A DNA stretch of 64,000 nt from Gracilinanus agilis (Eukaryota), in the NCBI RefSeq assembly GCF_016433145.1, contig NC_058132.1, positions 16,905,261 to 16,969,260 of the forward strand, read 5' to 3'. Below, piece by piece: positions 39,281 to 62,163 of the stretch (position 1 is its first letter; every line of letters begins with the position of its first letter). The translations under genes and the position numbers were made by a program. The notes beneath the pieces are model-generated. The model did no database searches, was not told the DNA's origin, and saw only the letters and a program-made list of their open reading frames with translations.

Positions 39281-39897
39281 TTACAGGCTACTGTGAAAGG
39301 CCCGCTTTATGACTCTCTGGGCATTCTTGGCTGCCCCAGTCAGGTACGTCCTGAGCATTTGGTAAACGACGGCGAAGGAGTAGCCGCAAGAGGCCACGAC
39401 GCCCAGCACTGGCACGGAGGACAGCTCCTTGGCAAAGACCCCTGTGGGGCCGTGGGTGGCCTCGGCCAGCAGCTCGATCACCTGCGCCTCGGTCACCTCT
39501 GTGGAGGGCCCCAGGATGGCGCTCTGCATGACCCGCAGGGGCTGGCCCGTCTGCTGGGCCAGTTTGCAGAGCGAGGTGGAGTCCAGGCCAAAGCTGCGGC
39601 GGTAGGTGTCCAAGGAGCGCATGAGCTGGCTCAGGTCGCAGGTCACTCCCTTCACTCCTGGCACAGGCTGAGGGTTGCTGCTACAGGCCACCGTGGCCAC
39701 GAGCCAGATGTGCTGCTTCAGGGTGTCCTTCTTCTTCTCCAGGATGGCCTGGGACACGTTGGGGAGGGCCACCAGGAAGGCGTGGTGCTTCTGGGAATCC
39801 ATGTCTTTCTCTATGATTTCAATGAGTAACTGGAAGTCGTACTTGCCCAGCTCAAACATGGAAAGCAGGAAGACCTCGGGGTCCATCACCCCCTCAT
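39281..39897 (-). CDS. Second IRG (p47-type) GTPase gene, coding exon 2 (G5 and C-terminal helical domain)
   Basis: Acceptor ttcttgtcttcctcag|AT at 39898; EGVMDPEVFLLSMFELGKYDF...YRRSFGLD...AQRVIKRAFHSSL-stop aligns collinearly with the IRGC C-terminal half in this window. Confidence 0.9.
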
Positions 39898-40104
39898 CTG
39901 AGGAAGACAAGAATCCTAGTGGTCTTTCCGGGGCCCCTTCTCTCCTCCCACTTCGTGGTCCCCCTTCCTCCTGGAAACTTCTTCCATTACTCAGCACCCT
40001 CTTTTCTGAAGAAGACTTTGCTCCACCTTCCAGACTGTCTCCCCTCTTCCTGGAAGGCTGGCTTAAGTAAGTGCCTTAAGGAAGTCTTAAACAGAGAAGG
40101 GCTC

Positions 40105-40490
40105 AGGGACAACTAGATGGCTCAAAAGATAGAGAGGCAAGCCAGGAGACAGTGAGGGAGGGTCCTCAGTTCAAATCTGGCCTCAGACCATTCCCAGCTA
40201 TGTGATCCTGGGCAGGTCACTTAAACCCCATTGCCTAGTCCTTACCTGTCTTCTGCCTTGGAACCAATATACCATATTGATTCTAAGACAGAGGGTAAGG
40301 GCTTAAAAAAAAAGAAAAGAAAATGGGGTCTCCTGGGGCAGCTAGGGAGCAAAGTAGATAGAGTACCAGGCCTGGAGTCAAGAGGACCTGGGTTCAAATC
40401 AGGCCTTCCTAGCTGTGTGACCTTGGGTAAGTCACATAATTCCAATTCTGTGGCTTTTACCACTCTTCTGTCTTAGAATTGTTGTCAGAA
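40105..40490 (+). mobile_element. Two adjacent CORE-SINEs (about 40105-40320 and 40336-40490)
   Basis: Two tRNA-like heads, each followed by CORE. Confidence 0.8.
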
Positions 40491-40627
40491 CCTAAGTGTC
40501 TTTTAAAAAAGAAAAAAAGATAAGGTCTCTCTCTGTTATCTAGGGCCTATCTCCTCCAGATCTGGTCATTCTCCTCCTCCTCTGGGAAGCCCTACCAAGC
40601 TTCCTAACAAGCCCCTGTCCAAAGGAC

Positions 40628-40999
40628 TGTATAATTGAAAATCTTGAACCTTTTGGACTCCATCACCCAGAATTCTTTTTCATCTCCCAGAATCCTTTTT
40701 AACTTCATTCACATAGCGTCTTTACATATTGTGTATATAGTTGTCTGTAACTCCACCTCTCGCTCTCTTTTTTTCCTTACGTGCAAGATTGGGTTGGCAC
40801 CCATCTTACTCTAGCTCTTTTTCTTTAGTTATTATTAATAAACTTTATAAAATATAATACTTAGTTATTGTATATTAATTTTAATTCTCACAATTTGGCA
40901 ACCACGAAGGGACAGAATTCTAAAAAATATTTTTTAAACCTTTGAGAAAAGAATTCTAGGAGATGGAGTCCAAAAAATTCAAGATTTTCCAATCATACA
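40628..40999 (+). mobile_element. ERV LTR plus tRNA-Arg PBS, closed by an inverted copy of the LTR 5' end, 4-bp TSD
   Basis: TG...CA LTR 40628-40892, AATAAA 40837, PBS TGGCAACCACGAAGGGAC 40896-40913, 53-nt inverted arm 40947-40999, GGAC on both flanks. Confidence 0.75.
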
Positions 41000-43838
41000 G
41001 GACACAAGACTTAGCTACAACATCAAGACCACCCCTCCCCCAACTTGTCCTGGAAGCTTGACTGCCAGAGCTTAACTCTCACTGGGCAGGCAGTCCTCTA
41101 ATGGTCCTGTGCATTCAAATTAGGACTCCCCAAATTCTGTAGGACAGGCACGACGAATGCCACAGAATCCCAGGCTTGCAGGGAGATGTCCAGGACAGAA
41201 GAGGGAGGTATCTAATGCAACCCCTTCCTGAGCAGGAACACCTTCCACAATTGATCATCCAGCTTCTGTGGGAAGATGCCTAATGGCAGAATGCTCACTA
41301 CCTGGGGTGTTTTATCATTGTTTTAATTTAATATTTAATTAAGTATTATTGATTCATTTTCTTATTTTATATTATATATAATATTAACATTTAATTATAT
41401 CATTATTCATGTAGTAATAATTATTATTCATAGAATCACTACACCTTGGAATTGTGAGGAGGGACTTCAGAGGGCATCTAGTCCAGCCCTGACCTGTGCA
41501 AAAATCTCCCTCCAAAATCTGAAAGAAGCCATCAACTCTCATGGAAACTCACTACCTGCCACGTCAGTCCATTCCTCACTGAAAGAGTTCACCCATTTAG
41601 ACCTGGAAGATCCTGGAGATCATCTACTGAAGAGGAAATGGACAACCAGAGAGGCTGTCATATTCAAAGTCACAAAGTGTCCAAGGAAGGATTGGAATGC
41701 AGATCCTCTAACTTCACCATCTTTTCCGCCACACCACAGTGCCCTCAACCCTGAATTGTTTGAAAGTTCTTCCCTAACATGCAGCTCACAACTGCCTTCT
41801 GCCTCCTGTTCCACCCTCCAGGTGGGACTAAAACAAGGGGACTGGATAGATTGTTCTCCATGCCCTCCCAGCTCCATCTCTGGGGTCCTGCAAGCCCGTG
41901 GTCAAGCCCAGTCGATTTTCCAGGCTTCCTCATCTGCTACCAAACACAGATACTTAGAAAACCCAGACTTACTATGGAAAAGGCTCTTCCATGTTCATTC
42001 CTCCTATTTTCCTGGAGGACACTATCTAGGCTTCACCTTTCCCTTTCACACCTTCCCTCTTCTCATACCTGCTTATAAATTCCATCTACCTCCATCAGAT
42101 TATGATTCCTTGAAAGCAGGGTCTGGGTCCCATCTCTGCAGCCCCTTGTCCAAGCAGATGCTCAATTAAAGTTTGTAGAATAGAACTGAACAGAGCCCTG
42201 GCCTTGGACCTCCAGCTGGTATTCTCTCCCCTTCATGAAAGAAAGGTCCTGCTCAGAGCGGTGACTAAGGTGGGCTGAAAGGGACTTTGCTGGGGGCACT
42301 TAAATGCAAAGGGTACAAAAATGAGCTCTTGGCCTCTTTCTGAAGACCCCTACTCACTAACTGGCAATTCTGCGCTTTGTTGAAGAGAATAATTAGTCCG
42401 ATAGGAAACCACCACTATCTTTGTGCTACTAGAGTAACTAATGACTCCTCCTGTTCATCTAGACTTCTCTAAAATTGCTTCCTGAACTGCTTTCACAGCA
42501 GGAATCACCACATTGATTTGAGGGTCTGCTTTGCTGCTTGACTCAGGTGCCCAGACTGCTACCGAAAGCTCTTCCCATTCTGATCTTTCTGCCCTCCTCT
42601 ACCTCCAGTAATAAAGGTGCCCCTCTGGGGTGTGGCAGCTTCTAGAAGGCTCACGAGAAGGTTTTCTGCCTCGTTTCCATTTTCCATCCCAAGACCCTCT
42701 CAATTCTGTTGTAGTTCACACCCATAGATTTGTCTAGGGGTGGGATCTCCATATGGCCCCCCAATTTAATGTGACCATAGTTCCCCTCTCCGGTTCTCAT
42801 TCTCTTCCTCATTCATTCAAAGAGAAACATTCCCACCCTGCTGACTTCATGAAACGATCTCTAAGATTGAAAACTCAAAACCAAATCTTGGAGGATTGAC
42901 TAAAGGAATTGGGAATGTTTAGTCTGGAGATTCAGGGGGAACAGGAGAGCCACTGTCCAATATGGCGGTCTTTGGAGAAAAGATTCAACGTATAGCTTAG
43001 GGGAAATTACAGAGAGACCAAACGAACATTAGAAAATCCACTCATCCCCAAGAAAGAATGGGAATACTTTTGGAATTGAGAGAGAGGCATCCCCAGACCC
43101 TGAGAGCCCTTGGCAAAAAAGCAGAGGGTGGGCAGCTTATAAAACAAATGCTGACCAAGTTACAGTTGAGCATGGGAAAATTAAGAGATCTACTGACCCT
43201 AAACATGAAGAGACAGAGACATGGGACTTGGTGACCACTAAATACAATTAGGAAAGGAAAAAAAAAACAGAGGTAAACCTGAAGACACAGAGAGGAGAAA
43301 TTCTGGTTTTGTGTTCAGAGAGGATGGCCTGCGTTGAAGAATCTGCTGAGAGGAAATCAGGCAAATTTCTAGATAAATTTCTGAGAAATGGGGTAGGGCT
43401 CTTGCCTTATACAAGTCTTCTATGAGGGCTTGTAGACTTTCTACTTTCTAAATGAGCTGCTGCAGGAAAGGTTTCAGCCTTTTCAGAGAAACAAAGCATG
43501 GCAGAGCCCACTCTCCCCATGAGGAAGAACGCTCTCTCTCTCTCTAGCTAAGGATTCCAGTTGAAATCAGAATTTGAAATGGGAGAGAAACTCCAATATT
43601 TCATGCCCATTGGACCTCTGCCTGCCAGCTGCCAACACTGACCACACATCCATTAGAACAAAGCTGGGCAGCAGCCACAGGAGGCCAGTAGAGAGCAATG
43701 CTTGACAGAAACTAGAAATCTGATCCAGCTGTGTCGCCACATGTTCTCTAGCTGCAGATGTCACTTCTATTTGTGCCCCTCTATGCATAGGTTTTGACCA
43801 CACATATATTGTCTGGGTATGCCCCTTTACATGTGGGT

Positions 43839-44350
43839 NNNNNNNNNNNNNNNNNNNNNNNNNNNNNNNNNNNNNNNNNNNNNNNNNNNNNNNNNNNNNN
43901 NNNNNNNNNNNNNNNNNNNNNNNNNNNNNNNNNNNNNNNNNNNNNNNNNNNNNNNNNNNNNNNNNNNNNNNNNNNNNNNNNNNNNNNNNNNNNNNNNNNN
44001 NNNNNNNNNNNNNNNNNNNNNNNNNNNNNNNNNNNNNNNNNNNNNNNNNNNNNNNNNNNNNNNNNNNNNNNNNNNNNNNNNNNNNNNNNNNNNNNNNNNN
44101 NNNNNNNNNNNNNNNNNNNNNNNNNNNNNNNNNNNNNNNNNNNNNNNNNNNNNNNNNNNNNNNNNNNNNNNNNNNNNNNNNNNNNNNNNNNNNNNNNNNN
44201 NNNNNNNNNNNNNNNNNNNNNNNNNNNNNNNNNNNNNNNNNNNNNNNNNNNNNNNNNNNNNNNNNNNNNNNNNNNNNNNNNNNNNNNNNNNNNNNNNNNN
44301 NNNNNNNNNNNNNNNNNNNNNNNNNNNNNNNNNNNNNNNNNNNNNNNNNN
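43839..44350. other. Assembly gap (inside the coding intron of the second IRG gene)
   Basis: N run. Confidence 1.
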
Positions 44351-44639
44351 TGTAAATGTTTAAGCAAAATTGAGATAATTTATCAAGGATGTCATAGAAT
44401 GCTGACTAGGAATTGGAGTAGATGGGATAGTTGCAGGATGAAGCCAATAGAGAGAGAAAGAAAATGAGATAGAGAATAATCAATAGAGAGAGAGAATAAT
44501 CAATAGAGAGAGAGAGATCCTGAGAGAGAGAGATCCTGAGAGAGAGGAGAGGGGCCTGGATCTACTGCATCCTGAAATGGGAGAGAAGAGAAAAAAAAGC
44601 AGATGAAGCCAGAGAAGGCTGTCTACTAAGTTTAAATTA

Positions 44640-44830
44640 AGCTGAGTTCAAATCTGGCTTCAGACACCAACTATCCATGTAACCCTAGCCCAGTCACTTA
44701 ACCCTGTTGGCCTCAGTTTCCTCATCTGTCAAATGAGCTGGAGAAGAAAATGGCAAACCATTCCAGGATCTTTGCTAAATTCCCAAATGGGGTCATAAAG
44801 AGTCAGATACAACTGAAAAAAAAAAATGAA
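44640..44830 (+). mobile_element. Mar1-type CORE-SINE
   Basis: CORE plus ggggtcataaagagtcagatacaactga tail. Confidence 0.75.
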
Positions 44831-45360
44831 TGACAACAAAAATAAATTGATCTAGAAGCTCTCCAGGGGACCTTCAGGCTTGAGATTTCAGGATTTTATG
44901 AAATGAAGGATATTAAAGTAGTGAGCCTCCCTTCTCTAGAGATTTTTAAGTTGAGGTTGGATGACCATTTGTCAATAAGGCTATGGAAGGAATTCCTGTT
45001 TGTGGAGGGGTTCGGCCAGACACCCTTTGTGGGGGCCCGTCTGCCTTGAGATTTTAGAATTCTATTGATATTAGGGATAGGAGGGTAGTGAGCTCCCTGT
45101 CCCTAAAGGTCTTCGGAGCAGAGGCTGGATGACTATTGATCACTGAGTCTACAGGACAATTCCTACTCAGGGAGGGGTTGGACATTCTTAGGCCACCTCA
45201 GTTCTGAGATTCGGTGCTTCTTTAGTCCTATCAAGCGTATGAGTGATTAAAGAAGTCGAGGTCTGTTTTGAGAGATGGCCCATCTGGGGAGTAGCCCTTG
45301 GGGATCTGAGACTGACCATTCTGGGCCCCCCAGATTGTTCCCTGAACGCCCATTCCTCAC

Positions 45361-45901
45361 CTTCCAGTTCGGTACAGCATTTCGCCCGGATCTCACAGAG
45401 CACGCCTTCCTCAGAGAAGGTGGTGGGCCGGCGTTGGCGGGAAGCAGCCATGTCGATGTCGACCTTAGAGCGGATAAAATAGAAGGGTTTTCCCTGGTCT
45501 TGGATGGCGCAGGCGAGTTGAGCGTGGCTGGTGGTGAAGCGTTCAGAGACCATGATGAGGAAAAAGTCATAGCGGCTGGGCAGGAGCTTATCCAGGTACT
45601 TGTTAGCTTCCATCAAAGGGGTCTCTACGCCTGGCATGTCCCAGATGATGACGTTGGGGAATTTGGGGTGTGGGTATGGTGTTGGGTCAGCGATGATCTC
45701 AACCACCCCCGTCTTGGCCGAGCCTTGGTCTTCATCGCCCAGGCCACGGATGACGTTGACAAAAGTGGACTTGCCCGACCCTGACCCTCCTGTGACAGCA
45801 ATGTCCAGACGGACGTTCTCTAGGTCTTGAAGGGTAGCCCGGAGCTTGGCAGATGCCACTGGTACTGTGCCTTCTTCGAAAGTTTCCTGGGGAGCAGCCA
45901 T
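45361..45901 (-). CDS. Second IRG GTPase gene, coding exon 1 (N-terminus, G1-G4)
   Basis: Acceptor cttcag at 45905 then GGG ATG G (good Kozak); G1 GGSGSGKS, G3 WDMPG, G4 RSKVD; donor GAAG|gtgagg at 45360, phase 1. Confidence 0.9.
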
Positions 45902-46134
45902 CCCCTGAAGAGGAGGAGTCGAAGTGTCTCTCCTGGGTTGTCTCTGGCCGTAAAATGAGAAGGCTCAGGGAGTTTCAGCTTGGGGGCCGATGGATGACCT
46001 TTGAGGGAAGGTGGGAAGGAGACATATCAGGCATCCCTCTGCTCACTGGGAGCAATGGGAAAGTCCCTTCCCGTCTTCGGGCCTAAATTAGTTTCACTAT
46101 AAAAGGGGGAAGTTATCTGAGGGCTCTCCCAATT

Positions 46135-56680: not shown

Positions 56681-56781
56681 TTCGGGTGGTTTCGTTGGCA
56701 TTTTTAGGGGCAGAAGCTCACGTCCCCTTATCTTCCACGAGATGGGGCGGCCCTGCCTCCCCACCCGCCAGGCTAACTCAC

Positions 56782-56840
56782 ATTTAGCAGGGCTTTCCTT
56801 TGGCCCTGGCCCCTCTGCCTCCTCTGTTGGCTGCCGGGCC
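56782..56840 (-). other. Candidate non-coding exon 1 of the second IRG gene
   Basis: Donor AAT|GTGAGT at 56781 is homologous to the IRGC donor at 61241; lies below a duplicated CCAAT/TATA-like promoter; 5' end approximate. Confidence 0.6.
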
Positions 56841-56930
56841 AGACTGTTGCTAGGGCCCATTGTAATGAGATCTGGATGCTGATTGGTTGGCTCCTAGGGG
56901 TGGGGGTGGGGGCATCTTCGGGTAAGGGGG
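56839..56930 (-). promoter_or_regulatory. Promoter of the second IRG gene (paralogous to the IRGC promoter)
   Basis: CCAAT 56882-56886, TTACAAT 56859-56865, CACCC boxes, GAS-like TTACCCGAA 56917-56925; aligns with 61312-61383. Confidence 0.65.
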
Positions 56931-57347
56931 GCAGAGTCCTGGCGTGGAGCCAGGGGACTGCCATCGAAGGACCCTTTAGGGTCCAAAATGGGAAGAGGAG
57001 ATGGGCGGGGGACGGACACTGTCTACACGGCTCCCTCGTCCTAGTCTCTTCTCCCCTCTCGTGGATGCTTGCAGCACCCCACCAGGAAGCCTCTGTGCCC
57101 GGCGCCCCCTTCCCCGAGGACGACACGCCTGTGGGCTGAAGAAGGGGGAGCCGGCCCCCCGCCCCCAGCCCTCGCCCCCGGCAGGCCGGTCTAGAAGCAG
57201 TGCGAGTCTCCCAACCCGTTGGTTTCTTCACATGGACTTTTTTTTTGGTAGGGATCGGGGACGGGGGTATGGGAATTGGAATGGGGGATGTTGGGATGGA
57301 GTGCTCAGGAGGGGGGGTTTTCTTTCTTTGGGGGAGAAGTGGGCGTC

Positions 57348-57353
57348 TTTATT
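57348..57353 (-). terminator. Candidate IRGC polyadenylation signal overlapping the stop codon
   Basis: Minus strand reads GAG AAA TAA A, creating AATAAA; no other canonical hexamer seen before the next promoter. Confidence 0.55.
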
Positions 57354-58743
57354 TCTCTTCGACCACGTCCCGTTTCTTCCAGCTCTCCAGAATGTACTTG
57401 AGCAGCAGTCCAAGCTTCCGGCGGGCTGAGAGTGGAGCGTCCTCCCCGCCGCCCTCGCCTGCCCCCCTCTTCTCCAACCCAGGCCCGCTAGAAGCGACGT
57501 CGAGGCGGGCGTCGGGGGCGGCCACCTCCTCTTCCAGGGCCTTGATGCGGACACGCTGGGCGTCCTCGGCCATCTCGTTCAGGCAGCCCTGGAGCATGGT
57601 GTAGACGGTCCCGAAGGAGATGCCGCCGGCCACGAGTGTCCCGAACACGGGGATGCCCTTCTCGAAGGCCCGGGCCACACGCATGGCCCCGTCCGATGAC
57701 TGAGCGTACATACGCAGCACCGCCTCTGGCGAGACCTCGGTGGCCAGGGGCGAGCGGATCACGGAGCGCAGGTCGCCGGCCTGCTTGCCCACCTGCTCGG
57801 CCAGCCTGGCCAGGGAGTCGTCGTCCAGGCCGAAGCTGCGGTGGTAGCCCCGCAGGGAGCGGATCAGGAGGGCGTCGTCGTAGGCGGCTGCCAAGCCCGG
57901 CACGGGTAAGGCCTGGATGACCCCGGACACCAAGGCCGTCTTCAGCACCTGCTCTTGGAGGGCGTCTTTCTTCTTCTGCAGGGCCTGCAGCGAGATGTCT
58001 GGCAGGGACAGGAGGCCGGCGTGGCGGCGATGGGCCGGGAGCTCCCGCTCCCACGTGGCCACCAGCAGCGGGAAGTCGTAGCGGGCCGGCGAGAGATTGG
58101 ACACGAGGAAGATCCGGGGGTCCTGGACGCCGGCGGCCCGGAGGCGCTCCGCGCAGTGGTCCCGGATCTCCTGGAGGACGGCGTTCTCGCTGTAACCCGA
58201 TGGGCGCTGGGTGCGAGACGCCGCCAGGTCCTCGTCCACTTTGGTGCGGATAAAGTAGAATTTCTTGCCCTGACGGAGGATCTCGCTCGCCAGTCGGGTC
58301 TCCACGGCCCCACAGCGACGGGGTGAGACCAGGAGGAAGAAATTGTAACGAGCAAAGTCTACTTGCTTCAGGTACTTGTCGGCTGGACAGCCGGGAGAGC
58401 CGGCCCCGGGCAGGTCCCACAGCATGAGCTCCGGCAGCTGCGGGTGGGGGTACGGGGTGGGCTGGGTCGTGGTCTCGATGACGCCCGTCCGGGCCGCACC
58501 GGGGTCCTCTGCCCCGATCCCTCGAAGGGCGTTGATCAGAGAAGACTTTCCGGCCCCGGACTCGCCGGTCACTCCCACCTCGAGGCGGCTACTCTCTGCG
58601 TTGCCCAGCAGCTCCCGGAGGCGGGAGGCAGCCTTGGGGATATCCCCCAGCTCGAAGGCTGCCCGAAGAGCCTCGAGCTCTTCTTTAGCCATGAGGATGG
58701 TGCTCTCCTCCTCGGACGGTGGGGCATGTGACTTGGACGCCAT
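57349..58743 (-). CDS. IRGC: Immunity-related GTPase cinema (interferon-inducible GTPase 5), single coding exon, 464 aa
   Basis: ATG at 58743 (MASKSHAPPSEEESTILMAKEELEAL...); GESGAGKS, WDLPG, TKVD, SN motifs; C-terminus RKLGLLLKYILESWKK typical of IRGC; syntenic next to SMG9. Confidence 0.96.
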   Translation of the reverse strand: MASKSHAPPSEEESTILMAKEELEALRAAFELGDIPKAASRLRELLGNAESSRLEVGVTGESGAGKSSLINALRGIGAEDPGAARTGVIETTTQPTPYPHPQLPELMLWDLPGAGSPGCPADKYLKQVDFARYNFFLLVSPRRCGAVETRLASEILRQGKKFYFIRTKVDEDLAASRTQRPSGYSENAVLQEIRDHCAERLRAAGVQDPRIFLVSNLSPARYDFPLLVATWERELPAHRRHAGLLSLPDISLQALQKKKDALQEQVLKTALVSGVIQALPVPGLAAAYDDALLIRSLRGYHRSFGLDDDSLARLAEQVGKQAGDLRSVIRSPLATEVSPEAVLRMYAQSSDGAMRVARAFEKGIPVFGTLVAGGISFGTVYTMLQGCLNEMAEDAQRVRIKALEEEVAAPDARLDVASSGPGLEKRGAGEGGGEDAPLSARRKLGLLLKYILESWKKRDVVEEK

Positions 58744-58950
58744 TGCGCCCCTGGGGAGAGTGGGGGGGAGTGGGGGAGTCTCGATGCGTGTGCTCCTTGG
58801 GGTAGGGGGCCGGCCGCTCACACCTCCTAGGCCCTAAGACCAAGCCAGAGACAGAGAGAGGGGACGGGGAGCAGACAGAGAGACAGAGGCACGAGACGGT
58901 TAGTGGGGAAGGCCCCAGCAAGCTCCTCCCGCCACCCCGTTCCTCTAGGC

Positions 58951-59125
58951 CAGTGGTTCCCCAAGTGGGCGCTGCAGCCATCCAGGGGGGCGGCGATGGC
59001 CACGGGGGCGTTTATCTTTCCTATTCGTTGCTATTAAATTTTTTTTTAATTTAATTTCCAGGGGGCTGAGGAATATTTTTTTCTGGAAAAGGGGGCGGGA
59101 GGCCAAAAAAGTTGGGGAACCGCTG
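58951..59125. mobile_element. hAT MITE (same family as 48613-48805, opposite orientation) in IRGC intron 1
   Basis: TIR CAGTGGTTCCCCAA/TTGGGGAACCGCTG; perfect 8-bp TSD CTCTAGGC. Confidence 0.92.
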
Positions 59126-61241
59126 CTCTAGGCTATGGAAGATGGTGCCTCAGAAGCCCCAGAGCGGGAGTCAAGAGCTCTTGTGGATTCGGGGGTCCCT
59201 GACTCACGTGCCACCCAACCCTTTGGGCAAGGATCCTGCACCTCTCCGGGCCTCGGTTTCCCCATTTGTCAAATGAGATTGGACTCTCGTCCTTAAAGAT
59301 CTTGCAGCTCTGACGCTGTCTGCCTCCCGGCTGCCTCCTCCATTTTGCCTTCTCTGCAGCCCATCCCCACGCCTCAGTCTATCTCTTATTAACACAGCGG
59401 GGGGATCGCTCCTTACATCTGCACATTCTGATCTCATTCAAGGAGTCACCCCCATATTTCACTCGTTGGCAAACCAAGGCCCAGAGCCGGCGAGTGACTC
59501 GCTCGCCCAGGGGTGGCCTAGAAGCAGCAGAGTTTCGGAATGGAAGAAGGACCGTCAGGATGGATTTGGTCCGCCACTTCCTCTCCCCCATACAGCCTCT
59601 CACATCTCACAGGGGACCTTTGTTTGTCTTGAGCCAACGTGGCCCCCCCGGCCGTGGCCTTGGTGGAAGGCATGGAGCCCCGATCCAGGCTTCGGACAAC
59701 CCGGGCGAGTCAGGTCTCGCTTCCTGTCTCTAGGCCTCAGTGACTTCCTCTGTAAAATTCTGGGGTCGCACTAGAGGACCACCATTGAGGTCTCTTCTGG
59801 TCCCAGGGGTCTCTGAAGCTACGGTCCTGGTTCCCAGTGGCGTCCTCTGTTGCCACCAAGAGGAGGGCCGGTTCTCTACCCATTGGGTCGCCCCATCCCA
59901 AACTCTTGCTCTCTTTCTGGGTCCCCTCTCATTCTGTCCTATCCTGGGGTCCCAGCGAGGGGGAGGGATGGGGGGCGCCTCAGATAAACAGCAGAAGGGG
60001 GAGGACTGGAGAAAGCTGACTCGTCTCTCCCTCCTTCGCATAGGGTCCACGAGTGGCAGACCCTGGGAGAGTCTACGGGGAAGCTGGGGTTCCTCCCCCG
60101 CCCACCCCCAACAGACACACTCGAGCCTTCCTCCCCTCAGCCCCCTGGATGGTGCTTTGGCTTTTGCAAGTATGATTATCATCTACATGGAAAGTAAGGA
60201 ATAGAACCCCAACCCCACCTTCCCAACACCCAGGATCTCTCTTCCCTTCTTCTGTTCCATGGAAGGTCCAAGATGTCCAAGCAGCAAACTACAGCGTCCA
60301 TAGGGCAGTCAGTAGAATCACACCATCCCTGCCCACCCCCCCACCCGAGATCCTTTCCTCCCTAGGCGGGGGGCTGAGACTGGGGGATCGGGCCCGGCAC
60401 TCCCCACCCCTGCCCGGCCCCCGCTTCCCCACGACAAGTTCCGAATGTTGGACTACCAGTCCACAGTGCCCATGAGACCAGCTGCCCTGAGTGCCCACAC
60501 CTGGGGTCTAGCCTTCCATGCAGAGCTCTGGGGGATTCGGGTGGCCACCTTAGAGGAGCCCCTTCTTCCCACACCCAAAGCCTCCCTTCTCCATGGCCTC
60601 CTTCTCCATGGAAGGTCTAGGATATCTGGCTACAAGCCCAGAGGAGAAAAGAGGGCATCGGGCTTAAGGCCTCCCACACTGGGGTTCCTCCTCCTCTTTG
60701 GGGAGGCTCTGGGGTATTTGAGCAGCAGCTGGCATCTGTAGAAGAGACTGGGGGAAATCCACTCAGCCCCGGCCCGGCCTCCGGAGTGCTCCTCCCCTCC
60801 CTTCCCTGGAGGGTCTGGGGTATCTGAGACACCTGGCACAGGGCCGAGAGGGGCCAGGTCACCTTTGCCCCCAACCCCGACCAAGCTCTCTTATCTTGGG
60901 GAACCAGGTGGCAGGCCCTGGGGATCCATCATGGCGAGCCAGAGAATCGGGCTCCTTCCTCTTGCCCCGAGCGGCCCCCTCCTCTCCTTTCAAGGTTCCG
61001 GGGTCCACTGGATGCCTTGGAGAATTGGGGTCTAGCCCCTCCTACCTCAACCCTGGGCTCCCCCCTCCCCCTCCACCCTGGGGCTGGTTCTGGGGGGCCC
61101 AGCTGAAGACCACAGAGGTCCGAAGGGCAGCCAGGGGAATTAGACCTAGATTCTGGGTCCCCGGGGCCTCTCTTCCCTTCTTCCCTCTGGGTTGCCCCGA
61201 TCTCACCCACATTGGGTACCGTCACCCCCAAATCAACTCAC

Positions 61242-61310
61242 ATTCACAGAGGAATTTCCCACACCCCTCAGACTCTCCCCGCCCACGGGGTCTCTCCCCG
61301 TTTGCCTGGG
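61242..61310 (-). other. IRGC: Candidate IRGC non-coding exon 1
   Basis: Donor AAT|GTGAGT at 61241; acceptor with long pyrimidine tract at about 58827-58834; IRGC is known to have a 5' untranslated exon. Confidence 0.65.
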
Positions 61311-61311
61311 C

Positions 61312-61385
61312 TCAGACCCCGTTGCTAGGGGCCATTATAACAGGGGCTAGCGGCTGATTGGCTGGCTCCGCCCGGCCGGGTAACA
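61312..61385 (-). promoter_or_regulatory. IRGC: IRGC core promoter
   Basis: Minus strand order: GC box GGGCGG (61368-61373), CCAAT (61357-61361), TTATAAT (61334-61340). Confidence 0.7.
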
Positions 61386-61649
61386 CCAGCGGTGGTCCGG
61401 GCCAACAATGCCCACTAGGGTGACCTCATGAGTGAAGCCTGAGGGGGGGAGGGGAAGGAAGAGATGCCTCCCCCCCTCGCTGATCCAGTTATTGGCCCCC
61501 GGTTCCTTCAGCAAACATTTACTGAGCTCCCACTGAGCTCAGGGTCCCATACGGGAAACTGAGGTAAATAAGTCATGGCCTCTCTGTGCTTAGGGTGTTC
61601 ACATTCTAGAGGAACCCATGGCCTGGCAGAGGGATGTCAGTCACATACA

Positions 61650-62163
61650 NNNNNNNNNNNNNNNNNNNNNNNNNNNNNNNNNNNNNNNNNNNNNNNNNNN
61701 NNNNNNNNNNNNNNNNNNNNNNNNNNNNNNNNNNNNNNNNNNNNNNNNNNNNNNNNNNNNNNNNNNNNNNNNNNNNNNNNNNNNNNNNNNNNNNNNNNNN
61801 NNNNNNNNNNNNNNNNNNNNNNNNNNNNNNNNNNNNNNNNNNNNNNNNNNNNNNNNNNNNNNNNNNNNNNNNNNNNNNNNNNNNNNNNNNNNNNNNNNNN
61901 NNNNNNNNNNNNNNNNNNNNNNNNNNNNNNNNNNNNNNNNNNNNNNNNNNNNNNNNNNNNNNNNNNNNNNNNNNNNNNNNNNNNNNNNNNNNNNNNNNNN
62001 NNNNNNNNNNNNNNNNNNNNNNNNNNNNNNNNNNNNNNNNNNNNNNNNNNNNNNNNNNNNNNNNNNNNNNNNNNNNNNNNNNNNNNNNNNNNNNNNNNNN
62101 NNNNNNNNNNNNNNNNNNNNNNNNNNNNNNNNNNNNNNNNNNNNNNNNNNNNNNNNNNNNNNN
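61650..62163. other. Assembly gap
   Basis: N run. Confidence 1.

What the first reader, a model, noticed from the sequence alone, without database searches (positions are those of the whole stretch)
56776..61383. Duplicated promoter and non-coding exon 1 module shared by IRGC and the intron-split IRG
Seen: + strand 61312-61369 (tcagaccccgttgctaggggccattataacaggggctagcggctgattggctggctcc) matches 56839-56894 (ccagactgttgctagggcccattgtaatgagatctggatgctgattggttggctcc). CCAAT to TATA-like spacing is 23 nt in both, and both lead to the same AAT|GTGAGT donor (61241 and 56781). The two proteins are far more diverged than this non-coding block. Inference: the genes arose by tandem duplication including the promoter, under long purifying selection or later gene conversion. 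It also identifies the paralog's start site 11 kb upstream of its ATG.
Basis: partly seen in the sequence, partly recalled or inferred. Interest (0 to 1): 0.75.

Follow-up and report, generated by a model that had tools for sequence, protein, structure and literature searches.

The report
Shared ancient promoter of two IRG genes
Two neighbouring immunity-related GTPase genes of a mouse opossum (the sperm gene IRGC and a little-known sister gene) carry the same short promoter-plus-first-exon module, kept almost unchanged at its core in egg-laying, pouched and placental mammals, which shows that the pair arose by a tandem duplication that copied the promoter; this is solid but fairly ordinary biology.

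Summary
Confirmed, with no RNA proof. The window is Gracilinanus agilis. Both quoted strings are exact. The two blocks align without gaps: 38 of 51 bases match, local score 49 against 23.2 +/- 2.7 for shuffles. It is the only such pair in 64 kb.

A pattern taken from the opossum alone (CCAAT, 15-45 bases, YTAGCAAC) hits the gene strand upstream of both IRGC and the paralog in echidna, a dasyurid, cat and bat, and nowhere else in those loci. CCAAT and YTAGCAAC are invariant in all 10 promoters. The offset between them is 32-33 bases in 9 of 10. A strong donor follows within 38-115 bases in 9 of 10.

Orthologous promoters are far more alike than the two promoters within one species, so this is purifying selection, not recent gene conversion. 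The protein tree places the duplication on the mammalian stem (support 93/88).

- The conserved downstream element is an RFX-type X-box half-site, not the TATA-like stretch.
- The conserved paralog acceptor puts exon 2 at 45998, not 45904.
- All IRGC promoters also have a CRE-like octamer, which therian paralog promoters lack.

The parts
61421..61428 (-). CRE-like octamer TGAGGTCA (1 mismatch to TGACGTCA), 67 bases upstream of the IRGC CCAAT. A SOX-like CATTGTT follows at 61404-61410.
   Evidence: an octamer with at most 1 mismatch lies 38-67 bases upstream of the CCAAT in all 5 IRGC promoters. Background is 0.05 per 260 bases. Sequence read.
61309..61369 (-). IRGC promoter module: CCAAT box at 61357-61361, TATA-like/AATGG stretch, X-box-like CCCTAGCAAC at 61321-61330.
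   Evidence: nhmmer E = 2.8e-15. Identity to the dasyurid is 94-100% in 50-base windows.
61242..61320 (-). Predicted non-coding exon 1 of IRGC. The 5' end is not determined. The donor GT is at 61240-61241.
   Evidence: Identity to the dasyurid is 0.94-1.0 here and falls after the donor. No RNA evidence.
57349..58833 (-). IRGC coding exon: ATG at 58743, stop ends at 57349. Candidate acceptors give exon starts at 58833, 58826 or 58750.
56834..56893 (-). Paralog promoter module: CCAAT at 56882-56886, ACAATGG stretch, X-box-like CCCTAGCAAC at 56846-56855. It lies 462 bases downstream of the IRGC stop.
   Evidence: nhmmer E = 1.2e-13. The orthologous module lies 505-607 bases after the IRGC stop in dasyurid, cat and bat, and 2562 bases after it in echidna.
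56782..56845 (-). Predicted non-coding exon 1 of the paralog. The 5' end is not determined. The donor GT is at 56780-56781.
   Evidence: The same CTGCTAAAT|GTGAGTTAG is present in the dasyurid. Identity is 0.80-0.88 over module and exon 1 and drops to 0.56 right after the donor. No RNA evidence.
45361..45998 (-). Paralog exon 2: conserved acceptor AG at 45999-46000, ATG at 45901, coding donor after 45361. The alternative opossum-only acceptor gives an exon start at 45904.
   Evidence: acceptor shared with dasyurid, cat and bat; 100% match to the NCBI model P0001 of Gracilinanus agilis.
39281..39897 (-). Paralog exon 3 (C-terminal half, residues 182-385 of P0001).

Best explanation
IRGC and its downstream neighbour, annotated 'interferon-inducible GTPase 5-like', are tandem duplicates made on the mammalian stem. 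The duplication copied the proximal promoter, a short non-coding first exon and the 5' UTR intron.

In both genes a core of about 45 bases has been held by purifying selection ever since. It consists of a CCAAT box and, 27-28 bases further on, the octamer YTAGCAAC. A short exon that ends in a strong GTGAGT donor follows.

Most likely mechanism (inferred):
- NF-Y binds the CCAAT box.
- An RFX-type winged-helix factor binds the X-box half-site next to the start site.
- Transcription starts just downstream of the octamer.
- The exon of about 50-80 bases is spliced to an acceptor shortly before the ATG. The intron is about 2.4 kb in IRGC and about 10.8 kb in the paralog.

IRGC promoters also keep a CRE-like octamer upstream of the CCAAT box. 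Therian paralog promoters have lost it, so the two genes probably share a core promoter but not all of their control.

Shown here: the homology, the positions, the conservation and the timing. Inferred: factor identity, start sites, junction use and tissue of expression. My sub-confidences: homologous duplicated modules under selection about 0.85; paralog exon 1 actually used about 0.65; NF-Y at the CCAAT about 0.7; an RFX factor at the octamer about 0.4.
For: - Chance is excluded. The score is 49 against 23.2 +/- 2.7 for shuffles (0 of 1000 reached it), and it is the only such hit in the window.
- An opossum-derived pattern hits only the expected gene-strand sites in the other loci: echidna L001 at 9698 and 14023, bat L002 at 7929 and 11892, dasyurid L004 at 7091 and 12005, cat L005 at 4267 and 7894. 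My estimate of the chance expectation is about 0.04 hits per locus.
- In the 10-sequence alignment A2, CCAAT and TAGCAAC are invariant. The offset is 32-33 bases in 9 of 10.
- An nhmmer profile finds only these sites, at E = 1e-9 to 3e-15.
- A GTGAG donor follows within 38-115 bases in 9 of 10 promoters. Eight of them are full GTGAGT. The background chance of a GTRAGT in 120 bases is 0.034.
- Orthologous promoters score 664 and 176 (marsupials) and 309 and 263 (cat against bat). The two promoters within one species score 49, 34, 23, 28 and 63.
- Marsupial conservation peaks on module plus exon 1 and drops at both donors.
- An acceptor before the paralog ATG is conserved in four therians.
- In the tree, mammalian IRGC (100/100) is sister to the mammalian paralogs (98/94), and the join has support 93/88.
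- The block is 75% identical against 55% for coding DNA and 34% for third codon positions.
- Literature: the IRGC proximal promoter is conserved between human and mouse, lacks ISRE and GAS elements, and the gene is testis-specific. The dog has a partial gene closest to IRGC (PMC1297648).
- Mouse Irgc1 is listed as a CREM ChIP target that is down in the Crem knockout (PMC4498915 Table S2). This fits the CRE-like octamer found in all IRGC promoters.
Against: - Two Logan IRGC contigs turned out to be unspliced.
- Mouse Irgc1 is not among the RFX2-dependent or RFX2-bound genes of PMC4498915 Table S2. That weakens RFX2 as the factor for the octamer.
- The left half of a full X-box is weak in most copies.
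- 9 of the 10 copies also fit a MYB site, YAACNG (read off).
- Echidna IRGC has the module 303 bases before its ATG with no donor, so a first intron is not universal.
- No canonical poly(A) signal lies between the IRGC stop and the paralog module in four therians. IRGC transcripts might therefore run into it.
- Support for the sister relation is below 95.
- Lizard and turtle homologs show no module within 10 kb, so its origin before the duplication is inferred only from its presence in both copies.
Confidence: 0.75

Rival explanations
1. The copy at 56834-56893 is not the paralog's promoter. It belongs to IRGC, as a 3' flanking enhancer or termination region, or it drives some other transcript. 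The paralog would then start closer to its ATG.
For: The copy lies only 462-607 bases after the IRGC stop in four therians, with no canonical poly(A) signal in between. No RNA evidence links 56782 to the paralog.
Against: It has the same strand, order and spacing as the IRGC promoter and is followed by a strong donor in every species. In echidna it lies 2.5 kb from IRGC, so it is not tied to the IRGC 3' end. The paralog ATG is preceded by a conserved polypyrimidine tract and AG acceptor, which requires an upstream exon. Conservation stops at the donor.
Confidence: 0.12
2. The likeness is kept up by gene conversion between the two promoters, not by selection on each one.
For: The two echidna promoters are the most alike of any within-species pair (score 63). 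They share spacer bases and a TGAGGTCAACCC stretch upstream. Both marsupial genes share AAT|GTGAGTT at the donor, which eutherians do not.
Against: In therians each promoter groups with its orthologue, not with its neighbour. Scores are 664 and 176, and 309 and 263, against 23-49. Gene-specific spacer variants (TTATAATGG against ACAATGG) are shared across marsupials and eutherians. In cat and bat the likeness has shrunk to the bare motifs.
Confidence: 0.07
3. The two promoters acquired the same factor sites independently (convergence) and are not homologous.
For: CCAAT boxes and X-box half-sites are common promoter elements. Outside the motifs the eutherian copies share almost nothing.
Against: Order, orientation and the 32-33 base offset are the same in both genes in 9 of 10 promoters. 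An AATGG stretch sits at the same place. Each module is followed by a short exon and a 5' UTR intron. Flanking bases are shared in opossum and echidna. The genes are adjacent sister paralogs.
Confidence: 0.05
4. The match is a chance resemblance of G+C-rich sequence.
For: The block is short and the region is G+C-rich.
Against: 0 of 1000 dinucleotide-preserving shuffles reached the score, which is about 9 standard deviations out, and it is the only hit in 64 kb. The module recurs at both expected places in four other mammals.
Confidence: 0.01

Closest known systems
IRGC (CINEMA, Irgc1) proximal promoter as described by Bekpen et al. 2005 (PMC1297648)
   Same: The promoter is conserved across mammals, has no ISRE or GAS, carries a weak Sox-like element, and the gene is testis-specific. 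Here no ISRE or GAS was found within -600 to +300 of any IRGC module. A SOX-like heptamer lies beside the CRE-like site in marsupials and echidna.
   Different: The paper does not name the conserved elements (CCAAT, X-box-like octamer, CRE-like octamer). It does not report that the neighbouring IRGC-like gene carries the same module. It mentions only a partial dog sequence 'most closely related to IRGC'.
MHC SXY enhanceosome module (RFX complex on X1, CREB on X2, NF-Y on Y; PMC7753138)
   Same: An RFX-type half-site of the CCTAGCAAC kind and an NF-Y CCAAT box are held at a fixed distance, with a CRE-like element nearby in IRGC.
   Different: In SXY the order towards the gene is S, X1, X2, Y, with ATTGG 17-18 bp after the X box. 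Here the CCAAT comes first, in the forward orientation. The X-like site lies 27-28 bases downstream, next to the putative start. No X2 adjoins it, and I did not look for an S box. It may work in a similar way but is not a member.
RFX2-dependent spermatid promoters with an X-box close to the start site (PMC4498915)
   Same: An X-box-like element lies immediately upstream of the putative start of a spermatid-expressed flagellar gene. IRGC1 is needed for fibrous sheath integrity (PMC9232189).
   Different: Mouse Irgc1 is not listed as RFX2-bound or RFX2-dependent, only as a CREM target. Most copies here are half-sites rather than the 14-base inverted repeat.
Ordinary tandem gene duplicates that keep their 5' regulatory region
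   Same: Adjacent, same-strand sister paralogs with homologous promoter, first exon and 5' UTR intron.
   Different: The age is unusual: monotremes and therians share both copies. The two copies are also asymmetric. IRGC protein and promoter are almost frozen, while the paralog evolves several-fold faster and has lost the CRE-like site.

Membership tests
IRG (p47) GTPases, Pfam PF05049 IIGP | Significant match to the IIGP profile over the G domain and helical domain | tested here: met
   paralog exon 2 E = 5e-59, paralog exon 3 E = 7e-23, IRGC (378 aa piece) E = 1e-92.
Tandem duplicates with a homologous promoter | Adjacent, same strand, sister paralogs | tested here: met
   (same order and strand in five mammals). 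(sister clades, support 93/88).
Tandem duplicates with a homologous promoter | Upstream similarity beyond chance, collinear, and conserved in orthologues | tested here: met
Tandem duplicates with a homologous promoter | Both blocks actually start transcripts that splice to the coding exons | not testable with these tools
Logan contigs L007 and L008 are unspliced. Only indirect support is available: donors, acceptors and the conservation profile.
NF-Y CCAAT-box promoter | Invariant CCAAT with flanks fitting RRCCAATSR (consensus recalled from the literature) | tested here: met
   CCAAT is invariant in 10 of 10. The flanks fit in 9 of 10; bat IRGC has A at the S position.
NF-Y CCAAT-box promoter | NF-Y binding, and a position about 60-100 bases upstream of the start site | not testable with these tools
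RFX X-box | Half-site RGYAAC, preceded by a second half-site GTNRCC at 0-3 bases for a full site (consensus recalled from the literature; JASPAR full-site and half-site models are named in PMC5838959) | tested here: inconclusive
   AGCAAC is invariant in 10 of 10. The left half fits 5 of 6 positions only in the cat and bat paralogs (GGTGCC) and is weaker elsewhere. 9 of 10 copies also fit the MYB site YAACNG.
RFX X-box | Dependence on, or binding by, RFX2 in testis | tested here: not met
   [quoted passage not shown] This is mouse only, and other RFX factors were not tested.
MHC SXY module | Order S-X1-X2-Y towards the gene, with the ATTGG Y box 17-18 bp after the X box | tested here: not met
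   the CCAAT is upstream and in the forward orientation, the gap is 27-28 bases, and no X2 adjoins the X-like site.
CREM/CRE-regulated spermatid promoter | CRE or near-CRE octamer in the proximal promoter | tested here: met
   a 1-mismatch CRE lies at -38 to -67 in all 5 IRGC promoters (background 0.05 per 260 bases). It is absent from the 4 therian paralog promoters, so this holds for IRGC only.

The most novel reading that the evidence does not exclude
The fixed CCAAT - 27/28 bases - CCTAGCAAC arrangement is a germ-line counterpart of the MHC X-Y enhanceosome. In this reading NF-Y and an RFX factor bind cooperatively next to the start site. The arrangement has been invariant for more than about 180 million years (my estimate for the monotreme-therian split). 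It would drive spermatid expression of both IRGC and a second, uncharacterised IRG GTPase. That second gene appears in monotremes, marsupials, bats, carnivores, a mole and whales, while no primate or rodent protein was among the listed hits. The gene would then be a second sperm IRG rather than an interferon-induced one.
Probability: 0.2. Interest if true: 0.55.

Novelty: new member of a known kind. Interest (0 to 1): 0.4.

Why it matters
- It gives the 'interferon-inducible GTPase 5-like' gene a gene model with a testable start site. This gene is an IRGC sister that is widespread in mammals and that no paper in the searched library describes.
- It predicts that the gene is controlled like IRGC, constitutively and perhaps in spermatids, rather than by interferon.
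- It names the invariant elements of the IRGC promoter, which Bekpen et al. 2005 described only as 'largely conserved'.
- It dates the duplication to the mammalian stem.
- The loss of the CRE-like site in therian paralogs offers a simple, testable case of regulatory divergence after duplication.

Tried and rejected
From then on those places were kept out of every search tool. IRGC was queried only as window:57610-58743. The window file was used only as a local target inside scripts.
- Logan contigs L007 and L008, fetched in the hope of finding spliced IRGC mRNA, are collinear with the genome across the acceptor and so are uninformative. Their proteins are 84-87% identical to the primate cluster, so I do not take them for human.
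- No DNA could be fetched for the Gracilinanus or wombat records. P0135 is not on record.
- A module older than mammals: no hit within 10 kb upstream of the Sceloporus or Carettochelys homologs.
- RFX2 as the factor is not supported by the mouse tables. No paper holds both Irgc1 and RFX2.
- Membership of the SXY module was rejected on order, orientation and spacing.
- TATA box as the conserved element was rejected. It is absent in bat IRGC and in both echidna copies.
- The spliced paralog protein was never joined from its exons. The exons were searched apart, by reference, and the NCBI model P0001 was used in their place.


Full report
**What is there.** The window comes from the agile gracile mouse opossum, Gracilinanus agilis. 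The split gene's first coding exon is 100% identical to the NCBI model 'interferon-inducible GTPase 5-like [Gracilinanus agilis]' (P0001, 385 aa). Both genes lie on the minus strand.

- IRGC is a single coding exon. The ORF runs 57349-58821, with the ATG most likely at 58743.
- The paralog has its ATG at 45901, a coding donor after 45361, and a last exon at 39897-39281.
- All three coding pieces match Pfam IIGP.
- The two proteins are 47% identical in the N-terminal exon and 37% in the C-terminal part.

- On the gene strand the blocks align without a gap, 38 of 51 identical.
- With flanks, the local score is 49 against 23.2 +/- 2.7 for 1000 dinucleotide-preserving shuffles. None reached it.
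- The pair is the only match above 30 when the IRGC block is compared with every tile of the 64 kb on both strands.
- Both blocks are followed by AAT|GTGAGTT. The last exon bases are 61242 and 56782.
- Coding DNA of the two genes is only 55% identical, and 34% at third positions, so the block at 75% is clearly better kept than the genes.

**Related loci.** The gene-position look-up supplied DNA around IRGC or the paralog for four other mammals:

- echidna (L001);
- the bat Eptesicus fuscus (L002);
- a dasyurid assembly (L003, L004);
- cat (L005).

In all four, IRGC is followed on the same strand by the paralog. I built a pattern from the opossum alone: CCAAT, then 15-45 bases, then YTAGCAAC. 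It hits exactly twice per locus, on the gene strand. One hit is upstream of IRGC and one lies between IRGC and the paralog. My estimate of the chance expectation is about 0.04 hits per locus.

- In the 10-promoter alignment A2, CCAAT and TAGCAAC are invariant.
- The offset from CCAAT to the octamer is 32-33 bases in nine promoters and 26 in bat IRGC.
- An nhmmer profile of the core finds only these sites (E = 1e-9 to 3e-15) and nothing else in the window or the loci.
- A GTGAG donor follows the octamer within 38-115 bases in nine of ten promoters. Eight of them are full GTGAGT. The background chance of a GTRAGT in 120 bases is 0.034.
- The exception is echidna IRGC. Its module sits 303 bases before the ATG and no donor follows.

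**Selection or conversion.** Orthologous promoters are far more alike than the two promoters of one species.

| Comparison | Local score |
|---|---|
| Opossum vs dasyurid, IRGC | 664 |
| Opossum vs dasyurid, paralog | 176 |
| Cat vs bat, IRGC | 309 |
| Cat vs bat, paralog | 263 |
| Two promoters within one species (opossum, dasyurid, cat, bat, echidna) | 49, 34, 23, 28, 63 |

Gene-specific spacer variants are shared between marsupials and eutherians. IRGC has TTATAATGG there and the paralog has ACAATGG. So the therian copies have evolved apart since before the marsupial-eutherian split. What they still share is what selection keeps. Conversion remains possible only for echidna, whose two copies are the most alike.

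Between opossum and dasyurid, identity in 50-base windows behaves the same way in both genes:

- IRGC: 0.94-1.0 over module and exon 1, lower after the donor.
- Paralog: 0.80-0.88 over module and exon 1, dropping to 0.56 right after the donor and to 0.2-0.4 deeper in the intron.

This is the best indirect evidence here that both blocks are promoter plus first exon.

**Timing.** I built a careful maximum-likelihood tree of 44 IRG proteins. The rows were chosen by hand. Primate rows were left out. The opossum IRGC row is the 378-aa piece.

- Mammalian IRGC forms a clade (100/100).
- The mammalian paralogs, platypus and echidna included, form a clade (98/94).
- The two clades are sisters (93/88), with reptile, amphibian and fish genes outside.
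- The IRGC stem is long (0.72) and its tips are very short. The paralog stem is 0.16 and its tips are several-fold longer.

The duplication therefore falls on the mammalian stem, and IRGC is the copy that changed and then froze. Lizard (L006) and turtle (L009) homologs show no module within 10 kb upstream. That the module predates the duplication follows only from its presence in both copies.

**What the elements are.**

- CCAAT box. Its flanks fit the NF-Y consensus RRCCAATSR, recalled from the literature, in nine of ten promoters.
- The octamer. CCTAGCAAC is the half-site form of the RFX X-box. The consensus GTNRCC, 0-3 bases, RGYAAC is recalled from the literature. PMC5838959 names separate JASPAR models for full-site and half-site X-boxes. 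The cat and bat paralog copies (GGTGCCTAGCAAC) come close to a full site.
- Evidence against RFX2 in particular. In Table S2 of PMC4498915, mouse Irgc1 is marked only as a CREM ChIP target that is down in the Crem knockout. It is not marked as RFX2-bound or RFX2-dependent. Nine of ten copies also fit a MYB site, YAACNG.
- CRE-like octamer. In line with the CREM result, an octamer with one mismatch to the CRE lies 38-67 bases upstream of the CCAAT in all five IRGC promoters. It reads TGAGGTCA in marsupials and echidna and TGACATCA in cat and bat. It is also present in the echidna paralog and absent from all four therian paralog promoters. Background is 0.05 per 260 bases.
It is missing in bat IRGC and in both echidna copies.
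- No ISRE was found near any of the ten promoters, and no GAS near any IRGC promoter. This agrees with PMC1297648.

**Comparison with the known.**

- Bekpen et al. 2005 (PMC1297648) reported a conserved, interferon-independent, testis-specific IRGC promoter with a weak Sox element. They also reported a partial dog gene closest to IRGC. They did not report the shared module.
- IRGC1 is a spermatid protein needed for the fibrous sheath (PMC9232189).
- The MHC SXY module also couples an RFX site and an NF-Y site at a fixed distance. Its order, orientation and spacing differ: X then ATTGG, 17-18 bp apart (PMC7753138). The module here may work in a similar way but is not a member.
- Overall this is an old tandem duplicate pair that kept its core promoter. 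It is a well-supported and useful annotation, not a new kind of system.

**Corrections to the gene model.** A polypyrimidine tract followed by AAG|GTCATC is shared by opossum, dasyurid, cat and bat. In the opossum the AG is at 46000-45999, so exon 2 starts at 45998. The junction to look for is therefore 56782 to 45998 first, and 45904 second.

**Limits.**

IRGC was queried as window:57610-58743, and the window file served only as a local target in scripts.
- Two Logan contigs with IRGC were unspliced. I do not take them for human.
- The spliced paralog protein was never joined from its exons. The exons were searched apart and the public model P0001 was used instead.
- Factor identities, start sites, junction use and tissue of expression are all inferences.

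Noticed in passing
window 45998-46000 (minus strand); L004 about 18870, L005 about 9960, L002 about 14405: A conserved acceptor (polypyrimidine tract, then AAG|GTCATC) lies about 30-95 bases before the paralog ATG in opossum, dasyurid, cat and bat. The acceptor at 45904 lies in an opossum-only insert of about 55 bases.
   Followed up: yes
window 61421-61428 and 61404-61410 (minus strand); orthologous sites in L001, L002, L004, L005: A CRE-like octamer (1 mismatch) is present in all five IRGC promoters and in the echidna paralog, but lost in therian paralog promoters. A SOX-like heptamer lies next to it in marsupials and echidna. This may be the 'weak Sox element' of Bekpen et al. 2005.
   Followed up: yes
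window 56887-57348 (minus strand); L004 11399-12004, L005 7387-7893, L002 11387-11891: No AATAAA, ATTAAA or AGTAAA lies between the IRGC stop and the paralog promoter module in four therians. Where the IRGC mRNA ends is unclear. An AACCAAC-rich stretch about 130-150 bases after the stop is shared by all four.
   Followed up: partly
L001 18478-19734, L006 10001-11236, L009 10001-11239, compared with window 39898-45360: The coding intron of the paralog is present in opossum, dasyurid, bat and cat. The echidna paralog and the lizard and turtle homologs are called as single uninterrupted ORFs.
   Followed up: partly
window 56917-56925 (minus strand); L004 about 11966, L005 about 7839, L002 about 11842: A GAS-like TTCNNNGAA lies 39-55 bases upstream of the paralog CCAAT in dasyurid, cat and bat. 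The opossum has the degenerate TTACCCGAA, and echidna and all IRGC promoters have none. This could hint at STAT input to the paralog only, or it could be chance (about 0.2 expected per 900 bases).
   Followed up: no
L002 18671-21386, L005 13734-21852, L006 12887-21236, L009 14029-19422: A gene of about 513-545 residues on the opposite strand follows the paralog in bat and cat, and follows the single IRGC-like gene in lizard and turtle. By position, then, the paralog, not IRGC, looks like the counterpart of the reptile gene. I did not identify the neighbouring gene.
   Followed up: no
   Followed up: no
window 61650-62163 and 43839-44350: Two N runs: one begins about 290 bases upstream of the IRGC CCAAT and one lies in the paralog's coding intron. 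The first limits how far the IRGC promoter can be read upstream in this window. I did not fill either.
   Followed up: no
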